Shown: positions 6,127 through 64,000 of the stretch, piece by piece | Numbering within the stretch: the stretch's first letter is position 1 | Layout of the letters: each line of letters begins with the position of its first letter | NCBI GenBank assembly: GCA_965644495.1 | Contig: CBFFSA010000009.1 | Coordinates: 310,001 to 374,000 of the forward strand | Reading direction: 5' to 3' | Source of the DNA: Perkinsela sp. CCAP 1560/9 | Lineage: Eukaryota; Protista; Euglenozoa: Kinetoplastea | DNA: 64,000 bases | Position numbers and translations under genes: made by a program | Notes under the pieces: generated by a model | Told to the model about the DNA's origin: nothing | Databases searched by the model: none | What the model saw: only the letters and a program-made list of their open reading frames with translations

Positions 6127-6155
6127 CAACAAGGTACAGAAACTGTATCTTTATC
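6127..6155 (-). other. Second identical spliced-leader-like 29-mer, at the outer 5' junction
   Basis: Exact copy of 5822-5850, abutting LRR codons GAT TTG GCG. Confidence 0.8.
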
Positions 6156-6661
6156 GCCAAATCTTCGAAGCAGTGCGGAAGAGAAGTCAGGTCCAACTCG
6201 CCTGCAAACCGATTTTCGTACAGAGTTAGTGATCGCAGTTCCGAAGGCAAGCGCGTGAGAGGCACTGTCCCTTCTAGCGCGTTCCCAAGCACATCAAAAT
6301 CGTACAAACTATGTGGGAGATAAATCAAGTTCATAGTACCTGACAAATCTCGTTGGGTCCATCTCACGTGGCTGACTTCTTCCCGCTCGTTACAACTCAC
6401 ACCTTCCCACTCGCATGCTGGCGTGTGAAGACTCCACGATTCGTCCAAGTTGTGGACTTCCGCGAGGAGACGAACGAGTTGATACTCTTGAGGTAAATTC
6501 GCAGCGCTCACTTTAGCAATACGCGATCTCGTCTTTGTAGTTTCTTCAGCAGAATGAGTGTTGGAAGGTATTGGGCTTTCGACTTTACGTCGTTTAGTCG
6601 ACGGTTCCTGAATATCCGAACATGTGAGCTGCACGATAGTGCGTAGGGTTAAGCGCCGCAT
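6155..6661 (-). pseudogene. 5' part of an interrupted LRR gene (NLS-like PSTKRRKVE)
   Basis: RIAKVSAANLPQEYQL and SW..TPACEWEGVSC motifs, two complete LRRs, and a third cut by the insertion. Confidence 0.88.
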
Positions 6662-7075
6662 GTAAAGTGAGAAGGCAATTTATATAATGAAAGTTAATTA
6701 TTTTTAGACATTGTTTTTAGTGGTTTATACCGCGTTGTTCGGAAACATTTCTCAGACAAAGTACCTTTTTTTGAACTACACGGAACTTTCGAAATTGTTG
6801 CACAATAAAGAATGGCTCTCGCCACAGACAAACATCGCCACAAAAATCGAAATTGCGAAAAGATATCGCAGTGTCTCGCTTTTTCTCGATCGTAAGATTT
6901 ATTTCGAAATGGAAGGTAGAAAAGAAGTTACACCTCAGCATAAGATGGATACCTGGACATCGAAATGCTGCAGAACCACAGTCTCGTAACAGCGACATTG
7001 CATCAAGTCGTAATACGAGTAACATGAGAAATAGTTCGAACAGAAATGGATTAACGACGCTGTCTTAATAAACCA

Positions 7076-8440
7076 GGGAGGGAGTCACGAATGACCTCGG
7101 AGGCAGATGACTACCTCCGGAGCGTGCACCCTCGGGACACGGAGTCTACAAGAAGACCTCGAATACCATACCAAACATGATTCGGAACACATGCCCGAGG
7201 GGAGGGAGTCACGAATAACCTCGGAGGCAGATAACTACCTCCGGAGCGTGCACCCTCGGGACACGGAGTCTACAAGAAGACCTCGAATACTATACCAAAC
7301 ATGATTCGGAACACATGCCCGAGGGGAGGGAGTCACGAATGACCTCGGAGGCAGATGACTACAGTAAACGTCACTATTCTGAGAGTCGCTAAAAATGAGA
7401 ATTGGGCTGTCAACGTACAACTGGCTAAAATGAGAATGCACCTTGAAAAATGAGAATGGAGCTTCTGTCATGTGTCAACGTTCAATTCAATTTTACACTC
7501 AAAAATGAGAATTGAAAAAAAAGCGCTTTCGTTTTCTCAATGATTAACTCACTGCTTCATCTTCACTCACTGGAGAGTTTGGACCCGAATGGCCAAATCT
7601 CCGTTACTGGGGGGGTATGCTTTTTTGGTGGGAAAAAACCTTTTTTACTCACGAGTTCGTTGATTTTCTGCCCTGACAACCCCGCAACTACGCCATTCGC
7701 TCCCGCGCAACCACCCTCACCCAGCCCAGCGACCCCCACCCGCCCAAACACCCCCCCCCCCTCCAACCACCCTCCCGAACCAAATCTCTGTTACTGAGGG
7801 TCAGCCGAAAAATCGTCCAATCTCTGTTGCGGGGGGGGTCTATTACTGGCACACAAATGTCTTAGTGAGACCAAAAAAAGAAAAGACAACATTGATTTAA
7901 GTGACTACGAGTAATGAAACTTTGTTTTTCTGAAAACAAAACGCTATTACACAAAAGGAAAACTGGCGCTGTTTGACTGCGCGGTGTTCTACTGATAGAG
8001 CGGCGACTCCGTAAACCGAGGAGATAGTTGGAGATCACTGGGGGTCATTTTTGTGCACCCAAAGCGGCCAGTTGCTCCGCTGCTAACGTGTTTCTTGCGA
8101 AACGTTTTCTTTTTTAAAAATGAGAATTGGGATTTGACCTCATAAAAAAGTGCCTGTCAACGTTCAACAGACCAATTCTGAGAATAGTGACGAAAAACGA
8201 CAAAAAAGCCGTTTTTTCTGTGTCAACGTACAACTGAGCATTCTGAGAATAGTGACGTTTACTGTACCTCCGGAGCGTGCACCCTCCGGACACGGAGTCT
8301 ACAAGAAGACCTCGAATACTATACCAAACATGATTCGGAACACATGCCCGAGGGGAGGGAGTCACGAATGACCTCGGAGGCAGATGACTACCTCCGGAGC
8401 GTGCACCCTCCGGACACGGAGTCTTCGAAAAGACCTCGAA
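7076..8440 (+). repeat. 124-bp tandem repeat array, interrupted by a MITE
   Basis: GGAGTCACGAAT recurs at 7081, 7205 and 7329. The third unit breaks at TA 7360-61 and resumes at 8265. Confidence 0.9.
7362..8264. mobile_element. Non-autonomous Tc1/pogo-type MITE, containing a fragment of a second repeat family
   Basis: TIR CAGTAAACGTCACTATTCT(G/C)AGA at both ends and TA TSD (7360-61, 8265-66). The interval ~7585-7850 resembles the 38658-38969 family. Related ends occur at ~24630-24690 and ~30085-30133. Confidence 0.85.
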
Positions 8441-8696
8441 TTTGATTATTAATAGAGGGCTGCGCAGTATGTCGTGCCAGGCCGATTCCCAAGCATTTCC
8501 TTATTATTAGAATTTTGGAGAAAAGCAATACGTAAAGTAGATGAATAAATAAGTGGACTTGTAAATAATGAGTTCAAGAAAGAAATACAGGCCCTTTGTT
8601 TTTTATCATCCGCTTATTTCAGTAACTTATAAGTTTAATATTGCGTTTGATTTGCGCTCTTCCCTCACACTTTCTCGTTTTTTGTTCACGAGAACG

Positions 8697-12679: not shown

Positions 12680-12937
12680 ATGTTCTAGAGAAATACAAAC
12701 ACCGCGTCACGTCCTCTCCTCCTCTACCGTATCCTTGGAACAAGGACGATACTCCTATCGACATAATCTGCTGCTTCAAGAGCTCGCGACTCATCTCCTA
12801 AAGTTTCCGTACACTTCGAAAGCCAACTTTGACATTCCGGGACTGCGCAACCCCCCGGACTGGATGGTAAACGATCTATCGTTGTTGCGGCCAGATGGCT
12901 GGGTGCAACTCAAGAATGTATGCGAATACATTATCGA

Positions 12938-14721: not shown

Positions 14722-15462
14722 TTAGTTAATAAGAACAATATTCGTACTCAGGAGACGAAACGGGTTATCAATTACGTGCTGCGGAAGTTCTGACCTCTTT
14801 ACTTCAGCACATAACGCTTCGTTACATCTTACGTCCAGGCAGAACAGCGATCGGGGAAGGTGCATGAAATCAATCAGCCCTGAAAAGAGGTTGTGGTGGA
14901 GAGACAAGATCTGCATGCCGTGCGGAAGTGCGTTCAACTCAAGACCTCCGGTAAGAGAATTATGGCAAAGATCCAGTTTCTCAATTTCCACTGGAAGCTC
15001 ACTTAAACAGATATTTCCAACGAACTTGTTTTTCCCCATATCCACCTGCCTCATGCTCGGGGGTAGAGCCGGCAGATCCAGACTTGCACTAAACAAATTA
15101 TTCCACACACTTATGTCTGAAAGGGTAGGGGGAAGATGACCCAATGTTACCTCACCCTTTAACCCCTGATGAGATACGAAAAACTTGGTAACCGAGACCG
15201 GAAGATGGATCACGTCGAGCGAACCGCTCAGTGGAGGTGAATAACCAAAGGGGTTCGCACTCCAGGAAATCTCACGAACACGCTGGTCCACACAAGTGAC
15301 CCCGTGCCAGTTACATGCGTGGATTTGTGCACTCCATGACGGACGCGGGTTCGAGATGTTCTGAATGAGTTTTGCGAGTTGATATTCCTGTGGCAGAACC
15401 CCCGCGGTGACTCTACCGAGACGTGTCGTTGAGATGTCGGCGAGATGAACATTTGGAAACAT
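14722..15462 (-). CDS. LRR-only protein
   Basis: RLGRVTAGVLPQEYQL, SW..ACNWHGVTC cap and about six 23-aa LPxxLxxLxLxxNxFxGxL repeats. Pyrimidine tract before the ATG. Confidence 0.9.
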   Translation of the reverse strand: MFPNVHLADISTTRLGRVTAGVLPQEYQLAKLIQNISNPRPSWSAQIHACNWHGVTCVDQRVREISWSANPFGYSPPLSGSLDVIHLPVSVTKFFVSHQGLKGEVTLGHLPPTLSDISVWNNLFSASLDLPALPPSMRQVDMGKNKFVGNICLSELPVEIEKLDLCHNSLTGGLELNALPHGMQILSLHHNLFSGLIDFMHLPRSLFCLDVRCNEALCAEVKRSELPQHVIDNPFRLLSTNIVLIN

Positions 15463-17855: not shown

Positions 17856-18623
17856 TTAAGCACCGAAGCCAAAATTTACTGCAGAGCGTAACTCTGATTC
17901 GTGTTTCTTGCGGCACAGTAGATCGGAGTTACCCACTAGGAACACCTTTTTGACAGAGCGTGGCAAATGCGTTAGGTCAACAATACCTGAAAACATATTG
18001 CAAGTCAATCCCATGAACTTCAAAGTCGAAGGAAGGGAGGTAAGATCGAGAGTCCCACTTAGTCGATTAAACGAGAGCGAAAACTTTTCTAAGTGTGGAG
18101 GAAGATTTGTGAGGCCAATTTCGCCAGTAAACATATTATTGTTCAGAAAAAGCGATTTCATGGTTTGCGGAAGAGATGGTAAGTCCAGTTCTCCTTGAAA
18201 CTGATTCTGCGCAATGTCTAATGCCTCATGTTTTAACGGAAGATCGCTCAGTACGATATGTCCGGTCATGGCGTTCCTTCTCCCGCTGAACAGGACAAGA
18301 GTTTGTGGGAAATATTGAATACACAACGGGCCAGATATTTTCTGCTCGTCCCAATCAATTTCAGTCATCTTATCGTCTTCGTTACATTTTACACCGTACC
18401 AATCACACACAGGGGTGTCGGTACTCCAGGAATCGTGCAACTTCTCGAAATCTCGCACCAGTCGTGCCAGTTGATACTCTACTGGTAGAGTAGCCTGACT
18501 TATCCTTCCAGCTCGTATTAACGAGGTCCGGTTAAAGTGTAATGTCGATCCATCGGTGGTGCTGATTTTACGTCGTTTAGCCAGAATTTCGGGAGAATCG
18601 TGCGAAAACACCAGGGGAAACAT
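17856..18623 (-). CDS. LRR-only protein with NLS-like LAKRRKIS
   Basis: RAGRISQATLPVEYQL, SW.TDTPVCDWYGVKC and about six LRRs. ATG chosen by family alignment. Confidence 0.88.
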   Translation of the reverse strand: MFPLVFSHDSPEILAKRRKISTTDGSTLHFNRTSLIRAGRISQATLPVEYQLARLVRDFEKLHDSWSTDTPVCDWYGVKCNEDDKMTEIDWDEQKISGPLCIQYFPQTLVLFSGRRNAMTGHIVLSDLPLKHEALDIAQNQFQGELDLPSLPQTMKSLFLNNNMFTGEIGLTNLPPHLEKFSLSFNRLSGTLDLTSLPSTLKFMGLTCNMFSGIVDLTHLPRSVKKVFLVGNSDLLCRKKHESELRSAVNFGFGA

Positions 18624-18849: not shown

Positions 18850-19476
18850 TTATATGATTGTGATCCGTGTCCCGTCCATGTTAAAGTAGAACTGTGGAAA
18901 AGATGAGTCCCCTACATTGCTGAGATTTACGTGATTCTTAAAATCAAACTTTCCTTCCAAGTCAGGATTATTGTGCAGATCTAGCGACCGCAAATGCGGG
19001 GGAAGCGACGAGAACTCCACGACCCCGGAAAAAAGGTTGTCGTGAAGCTGGAGCGTTTTGAGCATCGGCGGCGAGCACAGTAAGTTTGGAGTACCCGTAA
19101 ATTGATTTTCACCGAGATGCATGGACTTCAACGGAGCCGGCAGCTGCTCCCAAAGAACTTCTCCTTCTAAATCGTTGCGCGAAAGACTCAACGTAAGCAC
19201 CGTTAAAGGTAGGTGCTCCCAATTCAACTTTCCACGAAGTTCGTAGTTACACAAGTAGATGGCACATATCCTTTCTTGTTTATCGCAATAGACCCCCTTC
19301 CACTTGCAAATGGATGTGTTTGTGCTCCAGGACGAACCAGAGAACCTCGAATTGTTACGGGGAAGCTGGAGTCCGCTTACAAACCTCATCATGTCAAAGA
19401 CTTGAGGCACGGCAACGCCTCTCACTTTGGCTGGGCGATGAGTGGTACTTCGCTCGTTTGTGTAGTTGTCGTCCAT
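18850..19476 (-). CDS. LRR-only protein
   Basis: RPAKVRGVAVPQ, SWSTNTSICKWKGVYC and 4 LRRs. Confidence 0.85.
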   Translation of the reverse strand: MDDNYTNERSTTHRPAKVRGVAVPQVFDMMRFVSGLQLPRNNSRFSGSSWSTNTSICKWKGVYCDKQERICAIYLCNYELRGKLNWEHLPLTVLTLSLSRNDLEGEVLWEQLPAPLKSMHLGENQFTGTPNLLCSPPMLKTLQLHDNLFSGVVEFSSLPPHLRSLDLHNNPDLEGKFDFKNHVNLSNVGDSSFPQFYFNMDGTRITII

Positions 19477-23212: not shown

Positions 23213-24158
23213 TCAATGGAAACCACAGTATAAATCAACACCTCGAGGGAGCCTTCCGTGAAATTTCTTTTTCGGAACCCAATCCGTAAACTTATTCCCC
23301 CTCAGCAACACCCCATTATCCTCGCTCCATTCCATATACAGCATCTTGTGCTCCTGAACTTCCCCAAAATCCACAACCCCTTCGAACGCATTCCTCCGCA
23401 AATCCACATAAAGCATCGAGGGGGGAAAATCACCCGGAAAGGTCACCGACCCCGAGAGCGCGTTGCCGAATAAATTCAACAGGACCATAGACGACGGCAT
23501 CCCGCTTAACTCCAGCCCCTCCGTAAACTTATTCCTTGACAGGTCGAGCCGACAGAGCGACGGGGGTAACCCTTTCGTAAGAAAAAGGGGCCCGGTAAAT
23601 CGATTCATCCGCAGCCCGAGTTGCTGCAAACTCACCGGAAGGGCGGAGAGATCAAGAGCCCCAGAGGATTTCGCCTCCTGGAGGCGTAGCTCCGTGAGCT
23701 GCGGGTGATGTGAACTTTTACGGGGTAGGGGATAACCCGATAACCCGGTGCGCACCACATCGACCCTACGGAGTGACCTGGGGAGATGGGAAAGGGTGAA
23801 GCCATCCCCCAGAATCGTGGGGTAGCTGTGGAGCTGGAGTTGCTCCAGGGTCGCGGGAAGTGCCCCCCAGGAGAGGTTTCCGGCGAGTTGGGGGGATCCC
23901 GCACGCCCGAGGAGGGTGAAAATGTTTTGGTGGGTATCACAGGTAATGCCGCGCCACGTGCAGGGGGAGATTTTTTTTTGCCTCTCCGAAGAGGCTCCGC
24001 TTTTCGGTCACCCAGGAGGGGTCGCGAACGGTGGCCCCGAGGAGAAAGGTTTCTAACAAGTGCTCCTGAGGGAGTAAGTCGAGGCGTACTTTGCCGCACT
24101 TAAGGTGGGATCCGTCGTCCGCACCGTTGAAAGCATGACGCTCGAAGTTAAGAAACAT
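23213..24158 (-). pseudogene. Frameshifted LRR gene, paralog of 36957..37922
   Basis: ADDGS..GKV..L.PQE..LE.FL.GATVRD is shared with the paralog. The frame shifts in the T run near 23970. C-terminal LRRs lie in ORF 23213..23758. Confidence 0.8.
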
Positions 24159-25064
24159 TCCCGATGGTGAGTAGGGCTGTCCAATTCGAAATTTAAGTTA
24201 CAACTTTGTAAATTAGCTGTGCAATGTAGTACCCCATAATGCCCCAGGTGTAGATCAATGCCCTAGGGTAGTAAATCCATCTTAGCAAATCTCTCATTCA
24301 GCTTATTCAACTTACAGTATAGCCTTAATGTACAGTAAAGTACTTACAGCACAGTACTTACAGTACAACCTTAATGTACTACAAACTTGCAGGCTTAATG
24401 TACTAGCGATGGTTCTCCTCATTATAAATCTTCTATTCTTCACATTATAAATATTATTTACTTAGTATCTATGGAGATTATGTAGACAGTAGTTGGAGGT
24501 CGCTGACAGTCGCTGGCGATGGTGACAGTCGCTGGAAGTCACTGGAGGTCAGGATAACTAGAAATAGGACGAAGTCAACTGAAGTGAGGGGTGAAGCGTT
24601 GGAGTTCAACCCAGTTAATCTTGTTTTTGAAATGAGAATTCATATTTGACCCAAAAGAGGATCTGTCAAAGTTCAACACCTTGTTCTGATAGTAGTTTTG
24701 TCATGCAGGGCAAGACCGCCAGAGATATTTAGGGCCAGCAGGGGTAGGCACAATCAACGCTCCCTGCTGGACCTCTTCGCCTTCCGTGGGGACGCAGTGA
24801 AGGGCGCGGGATATCGAGTGATACTTCATTATCACTCCTTCGTAAACACGCTTGTTACCGGTCCCAAGCCCGGCACCGCCATATTCGGCGGAGTGTGAGG
24901 GTGAAGATTTCAATACATCTATAGCACGATTATAAACTAAATATAATTGAACTACTTGTTTCTAGTATCCAGTAGAACTACTACATTTAGCTCCATTTAC
25001 CTAAACAATCTTACACGCCTGAAAATGTCACGCATCAATTCGCTTGGTCCCGGCCTGGCAGTAC

Positions 25065-28494: not shown

Positions 28495-29112
28495 TTACTC
28501 GCGAATCATCGGACCATTCTTTACAATGATGCGTGTGGATTCAACATTGTAGCGCATGGACTTCGATAACGATTCCGCATCCAACGTTCCCCGTAACTCA
28601 GGATTGTTCGCTAGCCCCACACTACGTAGTGACTGAGGAAGTGAGAAAAAATGGATAATGTTTTCGAATTCGTTGTAGTCTAAGTCTAGAACTTGAATTG
28701 AAGTTGGTAGGTGTAGAAAATTAAGCTCTCCACTAAAATTGTTTTGATTAAGCAAAACTACTCGCAAAGGGGAGGGAAAAAGCTCAAGCGGGAGTTCACC
28801 AGAAAGATTGTTCGCACGCATCAGGAGTTGAGTTAAGGTTGTCGGCACATACTCCCAAGTGGGTGTACCACGTAACTTACGCACACACCAAAAGAGACGC
28901 CATAAGGTGCCGTCTTCCTCACAATTGTTACCCTCCCACTCACACGCTGGAGTGTGCGTATTCCACGAGTTGTGCTGATTTTCAACATTGTCTATGAATC
29001 TCACCAAGTCATACTCTAAGGGTAAGGCATTCCCTTTGACCTTTCCTGTCCGAGAACCGGAAAGAGTTGTTTCGTCAGATGCGCGCGTAGAAGCCGTGGA
29101 GTAGAATGACAT
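28495..29112 (-). CDS. LRR-only protein
   Basis: RTGKVKGNALPLEYDL, SWNTHTPACEWEG and 4 LRRs. Confidence 0.87.
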   Translation of the reverse strand: MSFYSTASTRASDETTLSGSRTGKVKGNALPLEYDLVRFIDNVENQHNSWNTHTPACEWEGNNCEEDGTLWRLFWCVRKLRGTPTWEYVPTTLTQLLMRANNLSGELPLELFPSPLRVVLLNQNNFSGELNFLHLPTSIQVLDLDYNEFENIIHFFSLPQSLRSVGLANNPELRGTLDAESLSKSMRYNVESTRIIVKNGPMIRE

Positions 29113-32770: not shown

Positions 32771-33401
32771 CTACATTACACAACACCGACCTTGTTGGGT
32801 AATCTGTGTGTGTTCAACGGAGAATTGACCCCCGACCAGCGAGGCGGGGAGATGCCTTGAGGCGTACACGCCGCACAATCGGGGGTTCGAACCCAGGTTC
32901 AGTTGTTCTAACCCTGGCGGCAGCGACTCAAACCGAACCGCTTTGTTAAACTGGTTATGTGAGAGCCCCACCGCCCTGAGGTCCCGCGGTAAGGTGGAGA
33001 AATCGAGTATGCCGAAAAACCAGTTCGTCGAGAGTTCCAGCTGGAGTAAACCTGCAGGAAGGCTTTGGAAGGGCACCGTGCCCTCAGGTGCGTTGTTGTA
33101 CAAAAGCAAGGAGATGAGCGTCCCGGGGAGATGCTCCCATCGCGGAATACCACGGAGTGTGAATGCCTGGGCGAAAGCTTTGTGTCCAAAACAAGACCAG
33201 AAGACCCCGACCACTATTCCGTGCTCGTCACATTCGACTTCGTACCACTGGCACGCAGGGGTCCAAAGTGTGTTGAAGTTCGCGACAGGTTCGGACCGAA
33301 TGTTTTTCAAAAACTCAACGAGGGTGTATTCCTGAGGTAGGGCGGCACTAACGCGGCCAAGACGACTTTGGGAAACGTCAGCGCTTCGTACGAAGGGCCA
33401 T
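32771..33401 (-). pseudogene. LRR gene, CAAX subfamily (ends RCCVM), ATG one base out of frame
   Basis: The upstream frame reads FVRSADVSQSRLGRVSAALPQEYTL. The only nearby ATG (33401) is offset by one base (ATGGCCCTTC), so this is a pseudogene or a sequencing indel. Confidence 0.8.
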
Positions 33402-34274
33402 GAGGGAAAGAATGAGGTTATTTAAAAGGAAAATAGTAATTTCGAAAGGAACGTAAATTTGAAATCTTTGATGGATTGCGACGCAAAAAATGACCATTTT
33501 TTTCGACAAAACATGGGCGTAAATAAACAGTTACGCCCTAAATATTATATATATGAAACAGTGTTGTTCGTACATGGAGAAATAAACCTCTAAAGTGACC
33601 TGAGGAAACGGGGATCATACGCGTAACAGAATTAGTCGAATTCGACGCGAGGGTAGAGGAACAAATCTTGGAATGTGGAATACTATAAAATACCACAGAA
33701 AGGTCTAGATCCTTTATACTAATTTAGATCACCTGATAGGAAGAGAACAGGTTTTGGATCAAAATAGCCAAGTCTCTCTTCCTGGAAGGGGGGGTGGGGG
33801 GGAATATTGACCTTTGAAGAAAAATTGGTGAAAGGGGACTTTTTTCCCCAGAAAAAAACTTGAATTTTTTTCTCGGTGGTTTCTCAAACAAAATTTCAGT
33901 ATTATCCAAACGAGTGATTAAGCATCGTATTTTTGTTACGTACACGACTCCTCTCTATGTTTTTTCTTTGCACAGGCTGTAAAATGTATGACAGTATCAC
34001 TTTTTGTAGTTGGGAACCTTGGATGACGTGATGATAGAAGCCTGTACCGTACGATGTGAATTAAAGAGTTCTTGTAATCCGCTGTTTAAGGAATTCGAAA
34101 TTATTGTCCAGGCTCAGAACCAAGATAGAGCTAATACATTTTCTTGTTTGGTATATTTTATTAAGTGAAGTACGAAGCTAAAAGTTTTTTGGGGAAAAAA
34201 GTCCCTTTAGACCGAAAAATTGACCTTTTTTGGAATGGTTTAATCGTATCTTACAGTACAGCTTTCATTGTAGT

Positions 34275-35051
34275 CTAAAAATACGACTTGCAAACAATTT
34301 TTGTATTGTCGTACACGAACTGGGTTGGAATTGCAGCCATGTTACCCTTTTCAATGGTTCCTCCGAGGTCATGGTTGTATTGTAGCGTTAGTATACGCAA
34401 CGACGGAGGGAGGAAGTTAAATTGGAGCACGCCAGAAAACTGATTTTCATCAAGTCGAAGGTGACGCAGATTTGTAGGAAGGTTTCCCAAATCAGGCGTA
34501 CCCAAGAAAGCGTTGCTATTTAAGAGAAGATCAAGCATTCCACGCGGCATGGATGCCAAATCGACAGGACCGATAAAGTAATTCCTCGTCAAAATTAGTT
34601 GACACAAACTACGTGGCAATGTGCTCATCTCTATTTCACCTTCAAACTTATTCTCTCGCAGGTCTAACGTCACAAGCCCAGGAGGAAGGTGCTCAAACAT
34701 GAGGACACCTGAAAATTTATTTTCACTCAGATTCAGTGACTGAAGCGTAGAGGGAATTTGTTCAAACGAGACCGTACCAGAGAGCGCATTATTCGTTACA
34801 TCGAATTGAGTGGTCGTAGGAGGAAGAAATGCCCAGTTTAAGGTGCCGCGTAGATCGCGGTGATCCCAACGAATTGAGTTGACTTTATTAGGAGGCACAG
34901 ATCCAATGCCACTCCAGTAGCGTGCCTGATTGGACTCAGCCCAGCTAGATAACCGATTTTCAACTTTTTCGACTAATCGGCTTAAATGATATTCATGGGG
35001 GAAGCTCGCTTTGCTTACTTTGCCAACTCGAGATTGGGTTGTTGTGTTCAT
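34275..35051 (-). CDS. LRR-only protein
   Basis: RVGKVSKASFPHEYHL, cap cysteines lost, and about seven LRRs. Confidence 0.88.
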   Translation of the reverse strand: MNTTTQSRVGKVSKASFPHEYHLSRLVEKVENRLSSWAESNQARYWSGIGSVPPNKVNSIRWDHRDLRGTLNWAFLPPTTTQFDVTNNALSGTVSFEQIPSTLQSLNLSENKFSGVLMFEHLPPGLVTLDLRENKFEGEIEMSTLPRSLCQLILTRNYFIGPVDLASMPRGMLDLLLNSNAFLGTPDLGNLPTNLRHLRLDENQFSGVLQFNFLPPSLRILTLQYNHDLGGTIEKGNMAAIPTQFVYDNTKIVCKSYF

Positions 35052-36956: not shown

Positions 36957-37922
36957 CTATTTCGACCTCTGTATACGATACTTGGCAAAATTAATCTTCG
37001 CTCCTAGCCACAGACCATTCGGCAAACCAGGACGTTCGCTTTTAGGACCCCAATCAGTCACTTCGTTCTCATCTAAGTTAATCCCATAATGACCTCTATC
37101 AAAGTATCTTGCTAAAATTTTGTGTCCAAGTATTGGGGATAAGTCAAGATACCCAGAAAACGAATTACCGAAAAGCCCAATGTACTCCATAGAAGCAGGA
37201 AGCGCTGTGGGGAATACTACTGGGCCTTCCATGTTATTCGAAGCAAGGTTTAAATAGACTAAATTCTGGGGCAACGCACCTAAGTCCAGCAGTCCAGTAA
37301 ACTGGTTTAAGGCCAAGTCGAGCGTTCGTAATCCCGGGGGTAACGCCGTAAGTTGAACAGATCCTGTAAATTTGTTACCCCGCAAACCCAATAATCCGAG
37401 GTTGTGCGGTAGAGTGGCCAAATCAGCCTCCCCAAAAAACTTGCTGTGATTGAGCTTGAAGTTTTTGAGCGTAAGCGGAAGATGAATGAAACTTACCGTC
37501 CCGGATAAACGAGTTTGAAATATTTGAAACCGATTTAGGCAATGAGGGAGGTGATCGAGAGGCAAGTCCCCTTGTAATTGTAAGTAAGTAAGTAACACCA
37601 ATGTGGTTAGTTTGCGGGGGAGGTGACTCCAACTTAAATTACCTTCAAGAATGGGACTATTCGCGTGGCCAATAATGCTGATAATATTCTGCTCTTTATC
37701 ACAGGTAATGCCTCTCCATGTACAGGGGGACACCTTTTTAAATCCGCTAAAAAATCGCCGTTTGTGTGTGATCCATGTATGGTCACGAACTGTTGCTCCT
37801 CTCAAGAACTCTTCAAGTTCATTTTCCTGAGGTATTAACTCACGACTTACTTTTCCGCGTCGAAGGTCTGACCCATCGTCAGCTGCAATGAGACAACGAA
37901 GCTCAGTTTTCAGATGCTTCAT
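36957..37922 (-). CDS. LRR-only protein
   Basis: RRGKVSRELIPQENEL, SPCTWRGITC and about seven LRRs. Confidence 0.88.
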   Translation of the reverse strand: MKHLKTELRCLIAADDGSDLRRGKVSRELIPQENELEEFLRGATVRDHTWITHKRRFFSGFKKVSPCTWRGITCDKEQNIISIIGHANSPILEGNLSWSHLPRKLTTLVLLTYLQLQGDLPLDHLPHCLNRFQIFQTRLSGTVSFIHLPLTLKNFKLNHSKFFGEADLATLPHNLGLLGLRGNKFTGSVQLTALPPGLRTLDLALNQFTGLLDLGALPQNLVYLNLASNNMEGPVVFPTALPASMEYIGLFGNSFSGYLDLSPILGHKILARYFDRGHYGINLDENEVTDWGPKSERPGLPNGLWLGAKINFAKYRIQRSK

Positions 37923-39223: not shown

Positions 39224-39892
39224 TTAGGGCCTAAAGGTACCGTTAGAGCAGTTCACACCCTTCATCCAAAGAAATTGTTGATCATTTGGAAGTCGCAGAG
39301 ATGATGCTCCGTGTAGAATATTGCTCATAATATTGCTCATACATAGCCGTGATATAGATTGTGGAAAATCTTCAAGGTGCAAAACTCTTTCGAAGCAGTT
39401 CGCATGTAGATATAATGTCTTTATATTTTTGGGAAGCTCCGCAAAATCTAATATGCCTGAAAACATGTTCACCGAGATATCTAGATATTCGAGTTTAGTC
39501 GGCAATACCTCTAATGGAACTTCACCGAAAAGGTCATAATTTACGTAGAGCTCCAAGGCAATAAGCGTAGAGGGCAAATACTCCCACCGTGGAATTCCTC
39601 GTAGATTAAAAGCTCTAGAAAAATTTGGAATCAAAGCTTGGGTTAATGTTAAGCGTTGCTGTGCCGATGCCATATTACGCCACTCGATACCGACCACATT
39701 GCCTTTATGATCACATCTCACTCCAAACCATTTACACGCGGGTGTCGATGTGCTATTGAAAATGTCACTCTGTGGGAGATCAACATTTTGAAGAATCTGA
39801 ACTAACGAATACTCGGGTGGGAGAAGCGCATTTAAACGTCCGAGACGAGTCGATGTACTGTCGGAGTTGCGCACAGAGATGAGAATATTCAT
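39224..39892 (-). CDS. LRR-only protein (RLGR subfamily; C-terminus lacks CAAX)
   Basis: RLGRLNALLPPEYSL, TPACKWFGVRC, LRGIPRWEYLP and 4 LRRs. Confidence 0.8.
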   Translation of the reverse strand: MNILISVRNSDSTSTRLGRLNALLPPEYSLVQILQNVDLPQSDIFNSTSTPACKWFGVRCDHKGNVVGIEWRNMASAQQRLTLTQALIPNFSRAFNLRGIPRWEYLPSTLIALELYVNYDLFGEVPLEVLPTKLEYLDISVNMFSGILDFAELPKNIKTLYLHANCFERVLHLEDFPQSISRLCMSNIMSNILHGASSLRLPNDQQFLWMKGVNCSNGTFRP

Positions 39893-40473: not shown

Positions 40474-41073
40474 TCAATTCTGAACCCAATCAGCCGGAAT
40501 GCCCCACCAAGAAGATTTAGGTTGAATGCCATTCGGAATCGATCCTTGGAGATTCGTATTTCCCGTTATATCAAATCCAGTAATCTTTGAATCCTTCATG
40601 AATGAAAGATCAACAAAACCAGTAAACTGATTTGCACCGATGTTCAGAGTTCGCATGGTAGGTGGCAGGTCGTCAAGTTGAAGCTCACCTGTAAACATGT
40701 TCTCTTGGAGCCACATTCTTTCAAGTCCAGGAGGAAGCGACGCAAAAATTACGCTCCCGCTCAATTGGTTGTCGCTTAGGTCGATTGATGTTACAGAACG
40801 TGGTATCGAACTCCAATGCAATATACCTGACAGTCCTCGAGTTTTCCAAGCAATGCGACTAACTTTACCCTCCTCACTACATGTCACACCATTCCACTCA
40901 CATGCTGGTGTAGTCGTGTTCCACGACTCGTGTACATTTTGAACATCACTAATAAACTTTGTAAGTTCATATTCCGGAGGGAGAAACATGCCCCTGACCT
41001 TACCTGCACGCGTTGTACCCTTCGGAGAATCTGCGGCTCTGCAAATGAAGTGTACCAGAAAACTATTACTCAT
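40474..41073 (-). CDS. LRR-only protein
   Basis: RAGKVRGMFLPPEYEL, SWNTTTPACEWNGVTC and 3-4 LRRs. Confidence 0.87.
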   Translation of the reverse strand: MSNSFLVHFICRAADSPKGTTRAGKVRGMFLPPEYELTKFISDVQNVHESWNTTTPACEWNGVTCSEEGKVSRIAWKTRGLSGILHWSSIPRSVTSIDLSDNQLSGSVIFASLPPGLERMWLQENMFTGELQLDDLPPTMRTLNIGANQFTGFVDLSFMKDSKITGFDITGNTNLQGSIPNGIQPKSSWWGIPADWVQN

Positions 41074-49040: not shown

Positions 49041-49685
49041 CTACATAATCAGACAAGCCCCCTTCTGCTCTCTGATAGCTCTGATTCTTGTCTCCCTAAT
49101 AGAAATTCTAACGAATCGTGGCAGTTTTTTTATGACGTACATTCCCTTTAGGTTTTCATTGCATTCTAAATTGAGCTCGTGAACGGCCTGTGGAAGACAC
49201 TCAAAGTGTAAAGCCCGTTGGAAGTCATTAAAAGAAAAGTTAAGATAGATCATTGTTCTAGGCAAGTCTGCGAAATCCAAGGTTCCTGAAAACGTGTTGG
49301 AAGCTAGATTAAGACTCTGCAGATCCCTGGGTAATGCGTCTAGCGTGACTGCTCCAGTTAAATAGTTCGTATAAAGCTGCAACTCAAGTAACGTTGCGGG
49401 CAAATGTTCCCAACGTAGCGTACCTCGTAGCTTACGTCCACCGAGAATAGCAGAGGAGTTCTGGTGTGCGGAGTGCATAGCGTGCCAATCGATCTTCTCA
49501 ACCTTTTGTGCATCGTTGCAATGTACTCCGTACCACTCACATGCTGAAATCTTTGTGGTCTTAAAAAAGCTGCTTGGTGGCGCATCAACGTTTTCTAGAA
49601 ATTGAACCAACAGAGTTTCCGGTGGAAGATGTGCACCCACACGTCCCAGACGTAGCGGCAAGGAGTCTGCATTTTGGACAAACAT
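49041..49685 (-). CDS. LRR-only protein, CAAX subfamily (ends ACLIM)
   Basis: RLGRVGAHLPPE, ACEWYGVHC, 4 LRRs, and a basic stretch before CLIM. Confidence 0.9.
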   Translation of the reverse strand: MFVQNADSLPLRLGRVGAHLPPETLLVQFLENVDAPPSSFFKTTKISACEWYGVHCNDAQKVEKIDWHAMHSAHQNSSAILGGRKLRGTLRWEHLPATLLELQLYTNYLTGAVTLDALPRDLQSLNLASNTFSGTLDFADLPRTMIYLNFSFNDFQRALHFECLPQAVHELNLECNENLKGMYVIKKLPRFVRISIRETRIRAIREQKGACLIM

Positions 49686-50013
49686 TAGGTATGTAAGAAA
49701 CAAGATAAGACTACTCGAAAAAACAATTCTCGAAACAAATTAAGAAAATTGTCCATGAACAGGAATAATATTGTGAATGCAACAGAACTTCAGGTTTTAA
49801 AAGGGTTCGCTGCCAGATTTATGTCGCTTTAAATTTAATTTCATGTCCTTCAACTATCAGAACCACAGTTTGTTATAACTTTTTCTTGCTAGAATTATGC
49901 CAATATAATGGTGGTATACACCACCAATGGTGGTATACCTTGTACAGATCTATACAACTGCTACAGTAGTATAGTGTATAGTCCATATACATGTACATGC
50001 ATAAATCATTATG

Positions 50014-55047: not shown

Positions 55048-55063
55048 GGCATAATACCAAATT

Positions 55064-59444: not shown

Positions 59445-59642
59445 GCTATCCAATCGATCCTATCAACATTTCTTCATTGCAATGTACTTCAAACCACTCA
59501 TGCTGGAGTCAGTGTTTTTTAAAAATTCTACTAGATGGCATATAAACGTTTTCAAGAAATTGAAGCAACAGATTTTCAGCTGGAAGATGTGCATTCACAC
59601 GTCCCAGACGTAGCGATGTCGTGTCCGCGTTGGCACAAACAT
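59445..59642 (-). pseudogene. Degenerate 5' fragment of a CAAX-subfamily LRR gene
   Basis: Similar to 50470-50673 (RLGRVNAHLPAENLL) with indels. Confidence 0.8.
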
Positions 59643-60065
59643 TACGTAGGTGTGTAAGAAAAAATATTGTTCTGTATAGAGAAAATTAATAATGTGAGTG
59701 CAAAATGTTGAATCCAAAATTTTGTAAGATTTTTTTGCTACATTCGCATATTGCCTTTATTGTTGTGCAAAATGTTTGCTCTACACCGATCCTTAGCCTA
59801 CGCTTCGTGACGTGAAAGATGCAGAAAAACGATTTCCAGATTGCACCTGTTCAGACTGTATACCTGTACCTCAAACTCATGCTTGCGACACAGAGCTTGT
59901 AATCTACGAAATGCGCGCGATAGCAAGAACTCGCCTTCAATCTGAAACCGTATTTGCGTGTCATGTCTTTCACGAAGAATGACTTGGCACTGGGGAAATA
60001 TATCCATCCGGAGTACATCACAAAGCTGATTTACGTCATCTGCGTCATTCCCCCCACTTTTATTA

Positions 60066-61196: not shown

Positions 61197-61619
61197 TTGC
61201 GTGAAGATTTCTCGCGCACAGCAAAGTTACTTTCCTCCCCGCGCCTGATGAACCCAAAATTTTTTCAGCATGGTGTTCCGTGGCTTTCGGATGTGACATG
61301 TATCGTAGATATCACTACCATTCCTTGCCGAGCGCGCAAGAAGCAAACTGTTTGGGACAGCACGCGTGGTGAGTACGTGCAAAAAGACGCAACTTACTCT
61401 GGAAAGCATCATGAGCATTGTTTTAAAGTAGAATTTTGGATGGTGTTGGCCGGAGTTCTTTTCTTTTTTCGAGGACCTGTGAATGGAAGTATCCATGATG
61501 CGATAGTTTACAGTACTACTACAACCCACAGGACTCCACTTTTCGATCATCACAAAGACGAAATGTTTCTTGGAGATCTTGGGTATATAGGTTCCAATCA
61601 TTGTTTCGTACCATCTTAA
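61197..61619 (+). pseudogene. PIF/Harbinger/ISL2EU-like transposase fragment
   Basis: IVDIT, YSGKH..CFK, GSIHD and LGDLGY match the DDE_Tnp_4/HARBI1 motif order. Confidence 0.7.
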
Positions 61620-62560
61620 GAGTACAATAAGAAAAACTTGGCCCTGGAATCTTTTTCTGTGGGAAAGAGGAGCATTGGTAATGTTCCTGTTGGCTTCTCT
61701 TTCCTTCGTCGCACAGTTCTTCTCCTGGTACAGCATCGAGGACATCTCCTACTCGATGTGCGTCCACGTGAACTGTACTTTCTGGGTGAGGTTGCCCAAG
61801 ACATGGAAAGCTACCTTGAGGAGCAACCATTATATGCTCCGCGACGAAAAGGCGAAGTGGGAGACTTTGTCGAGAGCTTGTGGCGCTCGATCACGGGACA
61901 ACGGTCTCGCGCTTGCGCAGCATGGCGCCAAAAACGCATGAAAGCTTCCACTTCCCTCGAAGCAAGCGCTGAAAGTGACCAAGTGGAAAGCCCTGCAAAG
62001 GGCCTATCGGGCAGGGTCATTCGATTTCCCGAGCTCGAGTAAAACGCTATGGGGCGAAAAAGGGAATACGAAGTGCGAAAGTGTAAAGTGGAAAAGATCA
62101 GCACTAAGTACAGTACTGTAACCCCCCTTTAATATACACCCCCCAAACCCCCCTATCATAGAGACAAAACGCATTATTCTACGTTAAAGGGGGTCACAGT
62201 ATTTGAAATGTGTTCAACTTTTTAAATATTTGCGAATGAGTGCTGAAGATCAGTTTTGAAATGTATAGTACATTAATATTTAAATCTTTTTTATGCATGG
62301 AGATCACCGCTGCATTCTCCCGAACTTTGCCCCCCTCGAGTGCTTACTCTGGTTTCATTCACTGGTTATTTCAAAATAGCTACTATTTCCTTTTTGACTT
62401 ACCTAGTGTTGAAACACCGCGAAACAGCGCTTTACGTCATCCGCAGACCCTCAACTATCAGAACTAAAGTGTCTGATAGCTTTTTCTTGCTAGATTTAGG
62501 CCACTATTATAGTGGTATACTGATCTATACAACTGCTGTAGTAGTATAGTGTATAGTCTA

Positions 62561-63388
62561 CAGGGGTGCGAATCTAAAGGTGGGGGGTCTAAAATTCGTA
62601 AAAGTTGTCCAATTTTGGAAAATAATAGCGCATTGGATAGCTCTCACAGAGTTGTATGTTTTAGGATAGGTAGCATCCGGGGTTTGGGAGGTACCCCCCT
62701 TTCATGTAAGGGTCAAAAACACATATTGCAATACTTTAGTGATGTCAATAATTTCTGTAATTTGGATTGCAAAAGACAATTAGTAACCACAGTGCCTCCC
62801 GTTCCGACTAATAACAATTTCACAACGCTTCCTGAAACTCTTCAACGTTTTCTGAACCGTTGCAGAGTGGGTCTGTTTCAATTTAAGGAAAGACCCCTCA
62901 ATGGCGGCTTCCAGTTGCTGTCGATTTCGGGGTCGAAGAAGATTTTTGTCTGTGTCCATCACAGACCACAAATTTTCGATCGGATTCAGGTCTGGAGATT
63001 TTGCAAGCCAGGGGAGAACGGAAATTCCTGTATCACGGAACGTGGCACGCGCCTTGTTGTGGGTCGGGCAGTTGTCCATGGCAATCGTGGGCGCTGGATG
63101 TCGCTTTAAATATTGAAGAAAGCCCCGTGGCTTTTTCATAACCTGATCAAAAATTCCAACGTTTCAACCCAACGTTTTAAAGTGTTCTCTTGAACACCAA
63201 AGTGCTGCGCCGTAGCGGAGTACGATCCTGTGCGCTCGTATTCCGCCACCAAAAGCATGCGGTGACTCTCTTTGACGGGGGCGGGGGAAGAATACGATCT
63301 ATCGCTCAGTACTCCACGGGAAGTCCTCGAGCGAGCGCGCCTTTGGGGCATTTTCTAGTAAAAACTGTAATTCCTGCGAGGGAAAAAA
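62561..63388 (-). mobile_element. Internally deleted Tc1-like copy lacking the left TIR
   Basis: TA plus right TIR. Transposase N-terminus (63136..63351) is joined to its C-terminus (62780..63139). Confidence 0.92.
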
Positions 63389-64000
63389 GTTTCTTCCTCT
63401 TCAGAATCTTCTTTCTCGTCTTCCGCAAAATGAAAAATCAGTTCTTCTTCGGCGTACAGTATATAAATAGAATATAGAAACAAACTGACAGTAATGTTAT
63501 CACTGTAAATTAAATTTGTAACTAATGTCCAGCAAAAAGATAAAGCACAAAAAATATGTACACGTATTGTTTTCATAGATAGTGCTTGAACGGTTAAGGT
63601 TCAACCTCAATAATAGTACCATAATAAATCAGTTTTTGTACAGTTTTTGTAGTTTTACGGACCTCTGAATTATTGTGTGATATAATCAGACAAAAGTTTT
63701 TTTCTTCGAAAAAAATAGAAATGCGCAAAAAAAGTAGTTTGTGTATAGCGCGCCAAAAAGTAGCATATTTACAGTTTCTGAAGTTTTTCAACCCGTGATC
63801 GAAAGCCGGCGGTACATTATCACTGAGCTACATAATCAGACAAGCCCCCTTCTGCTCTCTGATAGCTCTAATTCTTGTCTCCCTAATAGAAATTCTAACG
63901 AATCGTGGCAGTTTTTTTATGACGTACATTCCCTTTAGGTTTTCATTGCATTCTAAATTGAGCTCGTGAACGGCCTGTGGAAGACACTCAAAGTGTAAAG
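63389..64000. repeat. Near-identical duplication of ~48602-49210, including the 3' end (63828-64000) of a CLIM-ending LRR gene
   Basis: Base-by-base similarity. Spurious ORFs 48807 and 48954 recur as 63594 and 63741. Confidence 0.93.

What the first reader, a model, noticed from the sequence alone, without database searches (positions are those of the whole stretch)
6155..64000. LRR-only gene array with a shared N-terminal motif and alternative NLS or CAAX addresses: candidate effector repertoire
Seen: about 19 intronless, co-oriented LRR loci of roughly 200-320 aa. They have no obvious signal peptide, TM or enzymatic domain. Shared leader: (A/S)D...RxG(K/R)V-x3-4-LP(Q/P)EYxL, then a plant-LRRNT-like W..ACEWxGVxC cap and 3-7 variable 23-aa LRRs. 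Three have a K-R-x-K insert ahead of the motif (6155, 17856, 21410) and five loci end in CAAX. No gene seen has both. Inference: a fast birth-and-death family of binders sorted to nucleus or membrane. The conserved basic leader could be an export or adaptor-docking signal, by analogy to RXLR/PEXEL, in a parasite or endosymbiont. The leader recalls the expanded LRR proteins of the endosymbiotic kinetoplastid Perkinsela (recollection, unverified).
Basis: partly seen in the sequence, partly recalled or inferred. Interest (0 to 1): 0.8.

Follow-up and report, generated by a model that had tools for sequence, protein, structure and literature searches.

The report
LRR binder family with address tags
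The window holds about 19 same-strand copies of a family of over 1,000 small leucine-rich-repeat proteins in a Perkinsela-type kinetoplastid; some copies carry a nuclear-import tag or a lipid-anchor tag, and nothing I tested shows that they are exported to the host amoeba.

Summary
Twenty minus-strand ORF pieces, about 19 genes, match one family. They share an N-terminal leader, a plant-type C.W.GV.C cap and 2-7 repeats of 23 residues. Three genes carry a KRRK or KRQK insert, five end in CAAX, and none has both.

The "leader" has two parts. LPQEYxL(A)RF is the first helix of the LRRNT_2 cap, so it is structural. The basic stretch R-x-G-K-V-R-G-A before it is predicted disordered and is under purifying selection; its partner is unknown.

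The KRRK insert is a recurrent cassette (D-x3-P-P-x-KRRK) found in 36 of 186 members, about 55 times denser in tails than in bodies. CAAX is confined to one small clade plus one unrelated member.

There is no signal peptide. The genome has its own farnesyltransferase, a Ste24-like protease and importin-alpha. The simplest reading is therefore an intracellular binder repertoire sorted inside the kinetoplastid itself. Export to the host is not excluded but has no direct support.

Full-leader relatives occur only in unnamed assemblies and in the Paramoeba atlantica transcriptome. This scan has already reported the thousand-copy family on other DNA of this genome (s1-682876). New here are the anatomy of the leader and the tests of the address tags.

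The parts
1..146 (-). Leader fragment of a family gene whose body lies before the window start
   Evidence: Leader motif at 53; ORF fragment
922..1128 (-). Isolated LRR fragment
   Evidence: HMM hit to profile positions 155-201
6056..6661 (-). NLS-type gene (KRRK). The first 171 codons are intact, then it is cut by a retroelement near 6148
   Evidence: 92% identical to P0187 residues 1-171 only; KRRK insert
14725..15462 (-). Intact plain member, 246 aa
   Evidence: LRRNT_2 21.5 bits
16114..16842 (-). Member interrupted by an in-frame TAA at 16624-16626, inside the cap motif
17859..18623 (-). Intact NLS-type member (KRRK), 255 aa. Its relative P0014 in the P. atlantica transcriptome keeps the same AKRRKIS
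18853..19476 (-). Intact plain member, 208 aa
21413..22282 (-). Intact NLS-type member (PPRKRQK), 290 aa, modelled. Residues 1-40 are disordered, the cap helix is 43-50, followed by the LRR solenoid
   Evidence: AF2 mean pLDDT 90.3; Foldseek best hits are plant LRR ectodomains
23213..24197 (-). Frameshifted copy: the leader and the cap plus body lie in different frames
   Evidence: Overlapping ORFs 23937-24197 and 23213-24007
28498..29112 (-). Plain member, 205 aa
30247..31074 (-). Intact plain member, 276 aa, with the best Pfam cap match
   Evidence: LRRNT_2 27.8 bits against a cut-off of 20.7, profile positions 7-41
32774..33421 (-). CAAX member (CCVM) with no in-frame ATG upstream of its leader
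34278..35051 (-). Member of 258 aa whose cap has lost both cysteines
36960..37922 (-). Plain member, 321 aa, with a longer cap insert
39227..39892 (-). Member of the RLGR-type clade, 222 aa, without CAAX
40477..41073 (-). Plain member, 199 aa
42714..48430 (-). One CAAX gene (CFIM) split into a 5' half (47849-48430) and a 3' half (42714-43100) by a 4.7-kb reverse-transcriptase element (43101-47831)
   Evidence: (RVT_1)
49044..49685 (-). Intact CAAX member (CLIM), 214 aa
50017..50673 (-). Intact CAAX member (CLIM), 219 aa, modelled. Residues 1-20 have low confidence, the cap helix is 22-29, and the CAAX sits on a flexible tail after the last strand
   Evidence: AF2 mean pLDDT 89.7
59509..59685 (-). 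Leader-only fragment of the CAAX clade, with no in-frame ATG
63831..64000 (-). 3' end (CLIM) of a duplicate of the 49044 gene that runs off the window end
   Evidence: Identical C-terminus; identical scores for C9:359044 and C9:373831

Best explanation
The loci are members of a lineage-restricted family, with over 1,000 loci, of small intracellular LRR binding proteins in a Perkinsela-type kinetoplastid. They lie in one polycistronic, intron-free transcription direction and turn over by tandem duplication, decay and retroelement hits.

Each protein has a short disordered N-terminal tail, a plant-type LRRNT_2 cap, 2-7 LRRs of 23 residues with a free-varying concave face, and a C-terminal cap strand.

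The shared leader has two parts:
1. LPQEYxL(A)RF is the first helix of the cap and is conserved for folding.
2. The preceding basic stretch R-x-G-K-V-R-G-A is a conserved disordered linear motif. I infer that it docks a partner common to the whole family. That would make the proteins modular adaptors with a constant handle and a variable binding face.

Two optional modules set location inside the kinetoplastid:
- A classical monopartite NLS cassette (D-x3-P-P-x-KRRK) in the tail of about one fifth of members, read by the cell's own importin-alpha.
- A C-terminal C-a-a-M box in a small clade, farnesylated by the cell's own farnesyltransferase and so attached to membranes.

Shown: the architecture, the split of the leader, the enrichment, heritability and conservation of the tags, and the presence of the machinery. 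Inferred: that the tags work, that a common partner exists, and that the proteins stay inside the symbiont.
For: Family and arrays.

Cap helix:
- Pfam LRRNT_2 aligns from just after LPQEY to the second cysteine.
- Both AlphaFold models become confident exactly at L-P. Block mean pLDDT is 52-60 or 61-66 before it and 95-96 after it. The helices are residues 43-50 and 22-29.
- The fold matches plant LRR ectodomains.

Selection:
- L, P, E, Y and L carry 3.3-4.1 bits; K, V and A of the basic stretch carry 2.5-2.8 bits.
- All synonymous codons are used at conserved residues.
- dN/dS over 7 paralogue pairs: basic stretch 0.24, helix 0.17, rest of cap 0.27, LRR body 0.44.

NLS:
- 36 of 186 genes carry K[KR]x[KR] in the tail, 8.7 per 1000 aa against 0.16 in bodies.
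- Shuffled tails give a mean of 3.1 genes and a maximum of 11, against 36 observed.
- The flanks are constant.
- The trait clusters on the tree: 17 changes against 24-30 in shuffles.
- AKRRKIS is kept between the window gene 17859 and its relative P0014 in the P. atlantica transcriptome while the flanks diverge.

CAAX:
- The five window copies vary as CLIM, CFIM and CCVM, always ending in M.
- The box sits on a flexible tail.

Machinery in the same genome:
- Farnesyltransferase beta: E 7.5e-58 to 1jcq_B, against 8e-24 to Rab GGTase beta.
- PPTA alpha subunit.
- Ste24-like M48 peptidase.
- Importin-alpha IBB domain.

No signal peptide: tails before the LP of the cap helix (LPQEY) are as short as 12-17 residues and start M-S/A-D/E in one subfamily. 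Perkinsela has no cis-splicing (PMC11613528).

Expression: complete transcripts in MMETSP0151, Paramoeba atlantica.
Against: - No localisation data exist. In Leishmania most secreted proteins lack signal peptides and leave the cell in vesicles, including the LRR protein LaLRR17 (PMC10577668), so the absence of a signal peptide does not prove retention.
- A thousand-member, fast-evolving binder family is hard to justify for purely internal tasks in a symbiont described as reduced.
- Both cap cysteines are at least 90% conserved. To my knowledge they form a disulfide in plant LRRNT caps, which would fit an oxidising compartment better than cytosol.
- No Rce1 or ICMT was detected, so full CAAX processing inside the symbiont is unproven.
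- Start codons are inferred (nearest in-frame ATG, plus three transcript ORFs). The read data gave no transcript ends.
- The common-partner idea has no direct evidence.
Confidence: 0.55

Rival explanations
1. Exported effector repertoire. The proteins leave the symbiont by a non-classical route such as vesicles and act in the amoeba's cytoplasm. The basic N-terminal motif serves as the export or adaptor signal, and the host's importin and farnesyltransferase read the NLS and CAAX tags.
For: - The symbiont may secrete proteins into the host cytoplasm; the genome paper raises this as a hypothesis (PMC5601477).
- Bacterial amoeba symbionts also expanded LRR families with a constant N-terminal module, read as host-directed (PMC4209131).
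- A Leishmania LRR protein without a signal peptide is discussed as released in extracellular vesicles (PMC10577668).
- The family has well over 1,000 loci, a hypervariable face, a conserved disordered N-terminal motif, and is found only in this lineage.
- No Rce1 or ICMT was found in the symbiont genome.
Against: - No signal peptide or other known export feature.
- The motif has been seen only on this one family, unlike RXLR or PEXEL.
- Half of the proposed signal is the cap helix.
- The symbiont has its own farnesyltransferase and importin-alpha.
- There is no proteomic or imaging evidence.
Confidence: 0.22
2. Largely selfish or neutral expansion. The array is a by-product of tandem duplication and retroelement activity, and most copies have no maintained function or meaningful tags.
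For: About a third of the window copies are broken. Retroelements sit inside the genes. Earlier scan notes report elements that target the LRR codons.
Against: - dN/dS is below 1 in every region, and lowest in the leader.
- Conserved residues use all synonymous codons.
- CAAX and KRRK persist across divergent copies.
- Complete transcripts exist.
Confidence: 0.1
3. Secreted or surface LRR proteins of the plant LRRNT type, with a disulfide-bonded cap in the secretory pathway.
For: The conserved cysteine pair C.W.GV.C. The closest folds are extracellular plant LRR domains.
Against: No signal peptide, transmembrane segment or GPI-like tail. NLS and CAAX are signals read in the cytosol. N-termini can be as short as 8 residues before the basic motif.
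Confidence: 0.05
4. The basic stretch is a PTS2 signal for import into the glycosome. The CAAX clade reads R-L-x5-H-L and one other subfamily reads R-L-x5-Q-L.
For: 4 of 45 members fit R-[LVI]-x5-[HQ]-[LA] near the N-terminus. Perkinsela keeps a glycosome-like organelle (PMC5601477).
Against: The position that must be H or Q is the most variable one of the stretch, at 1.28 bits with N the commonest residue. The spacing is off by one residue in the main subfamily. A PTS2 on farnesylated proteins makes little sense.
Confidence: 0.02

Closest known systems
Plant-type LRRNT_2-capped LRR domains (Pfam PF08263 plus LRR; ectodomains of plant receptor kinases, PGIP, LRX)
   Same: A cap helix followed by W...C.W.GV.C; a solenoid of LxxLxLxxNxF/L-x-G repeats; best Foldseek hits (E about 1e-8, TM up to 0.70).
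   Different: A 23-residue rather than 24-residue repeat. No signal peptide, membrane span or kinase. An extra conserved basic stretch lies before the helix. NLS or CAAX tags indicate the cytosolic side. Sequence relatives outside the lineage match only the cap portion.
NEX1/PEX1 LRR expansions of amoeba-associated Chlamydiae (PMC4209131)
   Same: A symbiont of an amoeba; tandem, birth-and-death LRR families with a constant N-terminal part and a variable number of LRRs.
   Different: Those are bacterial, have up to 138 members, and carry an F-box, RING/U-box or BTB domain. Here the organism is a eukaryote, there are over 1,000 loci, and no such domain is present; the constant part is a short linear motif plus a cap.
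Prenylated or NLS-bearing injected effectors of intracellular bacteria (for example Legionella CAAX proteins; from my own knowledge)
   Same: Small repeat proteins that carry eukaryotic sorting tags.
   Different: Bacteria lack prenyltransferases, so their CAAX must be read by the host. This organism has its own farnesyltransferase and importin-alpha, so the same inference does not follow.
Leishmania LaLRR17 (PMC10577668)
   Same: A kinetoplastid LRR protein without a signal peptide or anchor, which that paper discusses as released by a non-classical route.
   Different: As far as I know it is a single-copy gene. Similarity to this family was not tested here. No cap, NLS or CAAX system is described in the passages I read.
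RXLR (oomycete) and PEXEL (Plasmodium) host-targeting leaders
   Same: A short conserved basic motif near the N-terminus of a large, fast-evolving family.
   Different: To my knowledge both follow an ER-entry signal and occur on many unrelated effector families. Here there is no signal peptide, and the motif is known only on this LRR family, directly abutting a structural helix.

Membership tests
LRRNT_2-capped LRR proteins (PF08263 + LRR) | N-terminal cap: a helix followed by W...C.W.GV.C | tested here: met
   PF08263 scores 27.8 bits (cut-off 20.7) for 30247-31074 and 21.5 bits for 14725-15462; other copies fall below the cut-off. Both cysteines and the W are at least 90% conserved.
LRRNT_2-capped LRR proteins (PF08263 + LRR) | Tandem LxxLxLxxN repeats that form a solenoid | tested here: met
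   23-residue spacing in 480 of about 530 neighbouring units, with L, P, N, F and G at 3-3.8 bits. AF2 solenoid with pLDDT above 95. Foldseek hits to plant LRRs.
LRRNT_2-capped LRR proteins (PF08263 + LRR) | Signal peptide and extracellular location, as in the plant members | tested here: not met
   Tails before the LP of the cap helix are 12-53 residues. Only 2 of 45 have an 8-residue Kyte-Doolittle mean of 2.0 or more. SignalP was not available.
RXLR/PEXEL-type host-targeting leader | The motif lies downstream of an ER-entry signal peptide | tested here: not met
   No signal-peptide-like segment. One subfamily starts M-S/A-D/E only 8 residues before the motif. Perkinsela has no cis-splicing that could add an exon (PMC11613528).
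RXLR/PEXEL-type host-targeting leader | The same motif heads many unrelated effector families | not tested
All full-leader hits in the profile search are LRR proteins of this family.
RXLR/PEXEL-type host-targeting leader | Demonstrated export into the host cell | not testable with these tools
   Needs proteomics or imaging.
Classical monopartite NLS | K-K/R-x-K/R in an exposed segment | tested here: met
   KRRK or KRQK in three window genes, within a region of pLDDT about 51-52. 36 of 186 family tails carry it, against a mean of 3.1 in shuffles.
Classical monopartite NLS | The receptor, importin-alpha, is present | tested here: met
   IBB domain at 53.2 bits in a 547-aa frame at G000:C8:320780-321010.
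Classical monopartite NLS | Nuclear accumulation that depends on the motif | not testable with these tools
   Needs reporter fusions.
CAAX farnesylated proteins | C-aliphatic-aliphatic-X at the extreme C-terminus; X = M favours farnesyltransferase | tested here: met
   CLIM three times, CFIM and CCVM. The C-terminal tail is flexible.
CAAX farnesylated proteins | Farnesyltransferase alpha and beta subunits in the same cell | tested here: met
   PF00432 at 243 bits. The 792-aa ORF is closest to farnesyltransferase beta (E 7.5e-58), not to Rab GGTase beta (8e-24). PPTA repeats found.
CAAX farnesylated proteins | Post-prenylation processing (Rce1 or Ste24, and ICMT) | tested here: inconclusive
   A Ste24-like M48 peptidase was found. 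No Rce1 or ICMT hit. The tool warns that no match does not show absence.
PTS2 glycosomal signal | R/K-L/V/I-x5-H/Q-L/A near the N-terminus, conserved across members | tested here: not met
   Only 4 of 45 members fit. The H/Q position is the most variable one of the stretch.
F-box/BTB/RING-LRR adaptor families | A recognisable F-box, BTB or RING/U-box domain N-terminal to the LRRs | tested here: not met
   Pfam finds only LRRNT_2, LRR and FNIP repeats. The tail is 12-53 residues and disordered.

The most novel reading that the evidence does not exclude
A eukaryotic endosymbiont (Perkinsela) exports a thousand-member repertoire of LRR binders into its amoeba host by a non-classical route. The conserved disordered basic motif acts as the export or docking signal, and interchangeable NLS and farnesylation modules are read by host machinery. 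This would be a eukaryote-to-eukaryote effector system convergent with those of bacterial amoeba symbionts.
Probability: 0.15. Interest if true: 0.9.

Novelty: new variant of a known kind. Interest (0 to 1): 0.58.

Why it matters
Perkinsela in Paramoeba is described as a unique case of a non-photosynthetic eukaryote living as an endosymbiont inside another eukaryote (PMC5601477). How the two cells communicate is open. The genome paper only hypothesises that proteins are secreted into the host.

This family has well over 1,000 loci in a 21-Mb genome. It has a hypervariable binding face, a constant N-terminal handle, and swappable nuclear and membrane tags. It is the most obvious candidate for a recognition or interaction repertoire in this genome, and I found no description of it in the searchable literature.

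Even if the proteins stay inside the symbiont, they are an unusual use of a plant-type capped LRR on the cytosolic side. They also offer a natural set of paralogues that differ mainly in their address tags. The work here turns "effector or not" into concrete experiments: fractionation proteomics, tag-swap reporters and peptide pull-downs.

Tried and rejected
1. Transcript ends from public reads. Only assembled contigs were available, and the one possible RNA run gave a single 177-nt piece at 21745-21921. This gave no information on trans-splice sites or start codons.
2. Polypyrimidine tract and AG analysis upstream of the chosen ATGs gave no consistent pattern, so it was not used.
3. [quoted passage not shown]. 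Rejected: a farnesyltransferase beta subunit and a PPTA alpha subunit are present.
4. PTS2 reading of R-L-x5-H/Q-L. Rejected as a family feature.
5. Conservation of the leader at the nucleotide level, for example by gene conversion or a regulatory RNA. Rejected: all synonymous codons are used and dN/dS is low.
6. An upstream signal-peptide exon. Unlikely: one subfamily has only 8 residues between the ATG and the motif, with no upstream in-frame ATG, and Perkinsela lacks cis-splicing.
7. Rfam scan of the window: no hit.
8. Wider genomic sampling. Counts of NLS and CAAX therefore rest on 45 genes from DNA plus 141 database proteins, whose N-termini come from automatic gene calls.
9. Naming the organism through a housekeeping protein. 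The farnesyltransferase search returned only unnamed near-identical entries and fungi.
10. Mutual exclusivity of NLS and CAAX. True in all 186 genes, but not significant given 5-6 CAAX genes that are mostly one clade.

Full report
ORGANISM AND SETTING

The window is G000:C9:310001-374000 of a 21.0-Mb assembly in 110 contigs. Several results point to a Perkinsela-type kinetoplastid, the endosymbiont of Paramoeba amoebae:
- The genome encodes a match above the curated cut-off to the kinetoplastid-specific mitochondrial RNA-binding protein MRP.
- Its genes lie in long single-strand runs.
- Members of the family studied here occur as complete ORFs in the transcriptome MMETSP0151, labelled Paramoeba atlantica.
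- Earlier notes of this scan reached the same identification.

Perkinsela is reported to lack cis-splicing altogether (PMC11613528). The co-orientation is what polycistronic transcription predicts and is not special to this family.

OBSERVATION

A profile built from window members and database relatives (A1) hits 20 ORF pieces in the window, all on the minus strand. It hits 56 more in 200 kb of contig C1, all on the plus strand. A whole-genome search gives 1,443 first-look candidate loci with the profile and 1,860 with a single member.

In the window these pieces make up about 19 genes of 199-321 aa. Every copy that keeps its 5' end has the leader, and nearly all of those have the C.W.GV.C cap. 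The repeat period is 23 residues in 480 of about 530 neighbouring units. The consensus is L-P-x-x-L-x-x-L-x-L-x-x-N-x-F-S/T-G-x-V/L-D-L-x-x, and there are 2-7 recognisable units per protein. The x positions of the strand (6, 7, 9, 11, 12) carry only 0.26-0.74 bits.

Three genes carry a KRRK or KRQK insert: 6056-6661, 17859-18623 and 21413-22282. Five end in CAAX: CCVM at 32785, CFIM at 42728, and CLIM at 49055, 50028 and 63842. None has both.

Two qualifications apply.
- The exclusivity of NLS and CAAX is not statistically meaningful. With 3 and 5 genes of 19, no overlap is expected about 38% of the time, and the CAAX genes are mostly one clade.
- About a third of the copies are damaged:
  - 6056 matches a full-length relative at 92% for codons 1-171 only and is then cut by a retroelement.
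  - The CFIM gene is split by a 4.7-kb reverse-transcriptase element at 43101-47831.
  - 16114-16842 has an in-frame TAA.
  - 23213-24197 is frameshifted.
  - 32771 and 59509 have the leader but no in-frame ATG before it.

ANATOMY OF THE LEADER

I anchored 45 genes held as DNA on the L-P of LPQEY.
- The strongest conservation is L (3.67 bits), P (4.06), E (3.91), Y (3.25), L (3.97), followed by A-R-F-I.
- The basic stretch upstream is moderately conserved: K at -6 has 2.76 bits, V at -5 has 2.46, A at -2 has 2.47, and R at -9 has 1.82.
- The (A/S)D element carries only about 1.0-1.3 bits.
- Conserved residues use all their synonymous codons, for example six Leu codons and four Pro codons. The constraint therefore acts on the protein, not on the DNA.

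Pfam's LRRNT_2 model aligns from profile position 7, just after LPQEY, to the second cysteine (27.8 bits).

Two AlphaFold2 models were built with 55-sequence alignments:
- The NLS-type 21413 gene: mean pLDDT 90.3.
- The CAAX-type 50017 gene: mean pLDDT 89.7.

Both are confident from exactly the L-P onward, with helices at 43-50 and 22-29. Block means of pLDDT are only 51-60 and 61-66 for everything upstream, including the basic stretch. The fold is closest to plant LRR receptor ectodomains.

The leader is therefore composite. Its best-conserved half is the cap helix. The basic R-x-G-K-V-R-G-A stretch is a disordered linear motif.

In seven independent paralogue pairs, dN/dS is 0.24 for the basic stretch, 0.17 for the helix, 0.27 for the rest of the cap, 0.33 for the tail and 0.44 for the LRR body. 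The codon counts are small (63 for the basic stretch), but the result agrees with the family-wide logo.

ADDRESS TAGS

I pooled the 45 DNA-held genes with 141 database proteins that carry the leader, 186 in all.
- 36 have K[KR]x[KR] in the tail, 8.7 per 1000 residues.
- Only 6 have it in the body, 0.16 per 1000 residues.
- Shuffling each tail gives a mean of 3.1 genes and a maximum of 11.
- The context is constant: D-x3-P-P/S-x-KRRK, resembling the textbook SV40 and c-Myc signals (my knowledge).
- Tag-bearing tails are longer: 38-52 residues up to the LP of the cap helix, against mostly 12-31 for tails without the tag.

On a tree built from the body only, the trait needs 17 changes, against 24-30 for shuffled labels. 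It is therefore a heritable subfamily feature with several gains or losses. The relative of window gene 17859 in the P. atlantica transcriptome keeps AKRRKIS while its surroundings diverge.

CAAX is much rarer. There were none among the 56 C1 ORFs and 1 among 154 database proteins. That one, P0108, ends in CSIM. It is unrelated to the window clade and sits among helicase, DnaJ, BTB and RNB genes. In the window clade the box varies as CLIM, CFIM and CCVM but always ends in M, and it lies on a flexible tail after the last cap strand.

WHOSE MACHINERY READS THE TAGS

If the symbiont lacked a farnesyltransferase, the CAAX boxes would point to the host. It does not lack one.
- One 792-aa ORF is clearly a farnesyltransferase beta subunit: E 7.5e-58 to human farnesyltransferase beta, against 8e-24 to Rab GGTase beta.
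- A PPTA alpha subunit is present.
- A Ste24-like M48 peptidase is present.
- An importin-alpha with an IBB domain is present.
- Rce1 and ICMT were not detected. I leave this as an open point.

SECRETION

There is no signal peptide. N-terminal tails are short and often acidic. One subfamily begins M-S/A-D/E and reaches the basic stretch after 8 residues, with no upstream in-frame ATG.

This argues against classical secretion but not against vesicular release. In Leishmania most of the secretome, including the LRR protein LaLRR17, lacks signal peptides (PMC10577668).

DISTRIBUTION

An exhaustive profile search with leader plus cap (A3) found 843 cluster representatives at E up to 1e-3 and 377 at up to 1e-10. 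Of the 150 listed, every hit that covers the leader part of the profile is a short protein. Those I looked up come from unnamed ENA, JGI or MMETSP records. Long plant and bacterial proteins match only profile positions of about 26-62, the cap.

In the word-indexed search, family members score E 1e-33 or better, and the next hit is a grass LRR protein at 2e-10.

No paper in the library connects Perkinsela with LRR proteins. The 2017 genome paper does not contain the word leucine. That paper reports 9.5 Mb and 5,252 genes, and I saw no NCBI-named Perkinsela protein among the hits. Whether the family is missing from that assembly was not resolved.

INTERPRETATION

Best-supported reading (confidence 0.55): an intracellular repertoire of modular binders. 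Each has a variable LRR face, a structural plant-type cap, a constant disordered basic handle that probably docks a shared partner, and optional NLS or farnesyl tags that place subsets in the nucleus or on membranes of the kinetoplastid itself.

It draws plausibility from the biology. Bacterial amoeba symbionts expanded LRR families with a constant N-terminal module (PMC4209131), and the Perkinsela paper itself hypothesises secretion into the host. However, none of the tests I could run favoured it.

Minor rivals:
- Neutral or selfish expansion (0.10).
- Extracellular proteins with a disulfide-bonded cap (0.05). This is the one reading that would explain the conserved cysteine pair.
- PTS2 targeting (0.02). 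Only 4 of 45 members fit, and the diagnostic H/Q position is the most variable one of the stretch.

RELATION TO EARLIER SCAN NOTES

The thousand-copy capped LRR family (s1-682876) and the retroelements that insert into its repeats (s1-682832, s1-682826, s1-682958) were already reported on other DNA of this genome or noted on this window. A first-reader note on this window flagged the CAAX subfamily (s1-683068). My counts and the broken genes seen here agree with them. New here are the split of the leader, the statistics on the tags and the machinery tests.

LIMITS

- Start codons are inferred.
- The N-termini of database proteins come from automatic gene calls.
- Only 264 kb of the genome could be read.
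- SignalP, NLS and prenylation predictors were not available, so simple sequence rules were used instead.

Noticed in passing
window 43101-47831 (-) and 1202-5827 (-): Reverse-transcriptase elements (RVT_1 plus zf-RVT, 1,561-aa ORF) sit inside LRR genes in the same orientation as the gene. One splits the CFIM gene. Another follows the truncated 6056 gene, whose match to a full-length relative stops at codon 171.
   Followed up: partly
window 49044-50673 versus 63831-64000 and beyond (G000:C9:373831-375451): Tandem segmental duplication about 14.8 kb apart. The 49044 gene has an identically scoring twin at C9:373831. The 50017 gene has an 81% identical twin at C9:374804 that carries a TGA.
   Followed up: partly
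window 11263-12384 (+): Tc1/mariner-like transposase ORF of 373 aa (HTH_Tnp_Tc3_2 plus DDE_3) between LRR genes.
   Followed up: no
window 25127-25857 (both strands): ORFs with an internally repeated peptide of about 41 residues, reflecting a tandem DNA array of about 123 bp.
   Followed up: no
G000 whole genome: Farnesyltransferase alpha and beta and a Ste24-like peptidase are present, but no Rce1-like (PF02517) or ICMT (PF04140) match was found. Either they are too divergent to detect or the CAAX processing pathway is truncated.
   Followed up: partly
L023:10001-10780 (ENA contig, protein P0108): A single family member ending in CSIM lies among helicase, DnaJ, BTB and RNB genes rather than in an LRR array, and it is unrelated to the window's CAAX clade. 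It may be an older, housekeeping-like member.
   Followed up: partly
L021:343-2718 (G000:C1:3949129-3951504): The farnesyltransferase beta ORF is 792 aa, about twice the length of the human chain (437 aa), and matches it in three separate stretches. It therefore carries large insertions. A 97% identical copy exists in an unnamed ENA assembly.
   Followed up: no
proteins P0022 (855 aa) and P0025 (678 aa): Rare multi-module relatives in which two or more cap-plus-LRR units are fused in one ORF.
   Followed up: no
window 34278-35051 (-): An otherwise intact member has lost both cap cysteines, so the cysteine pair is not indispensable for keeping an open frame.
   Followed up: no
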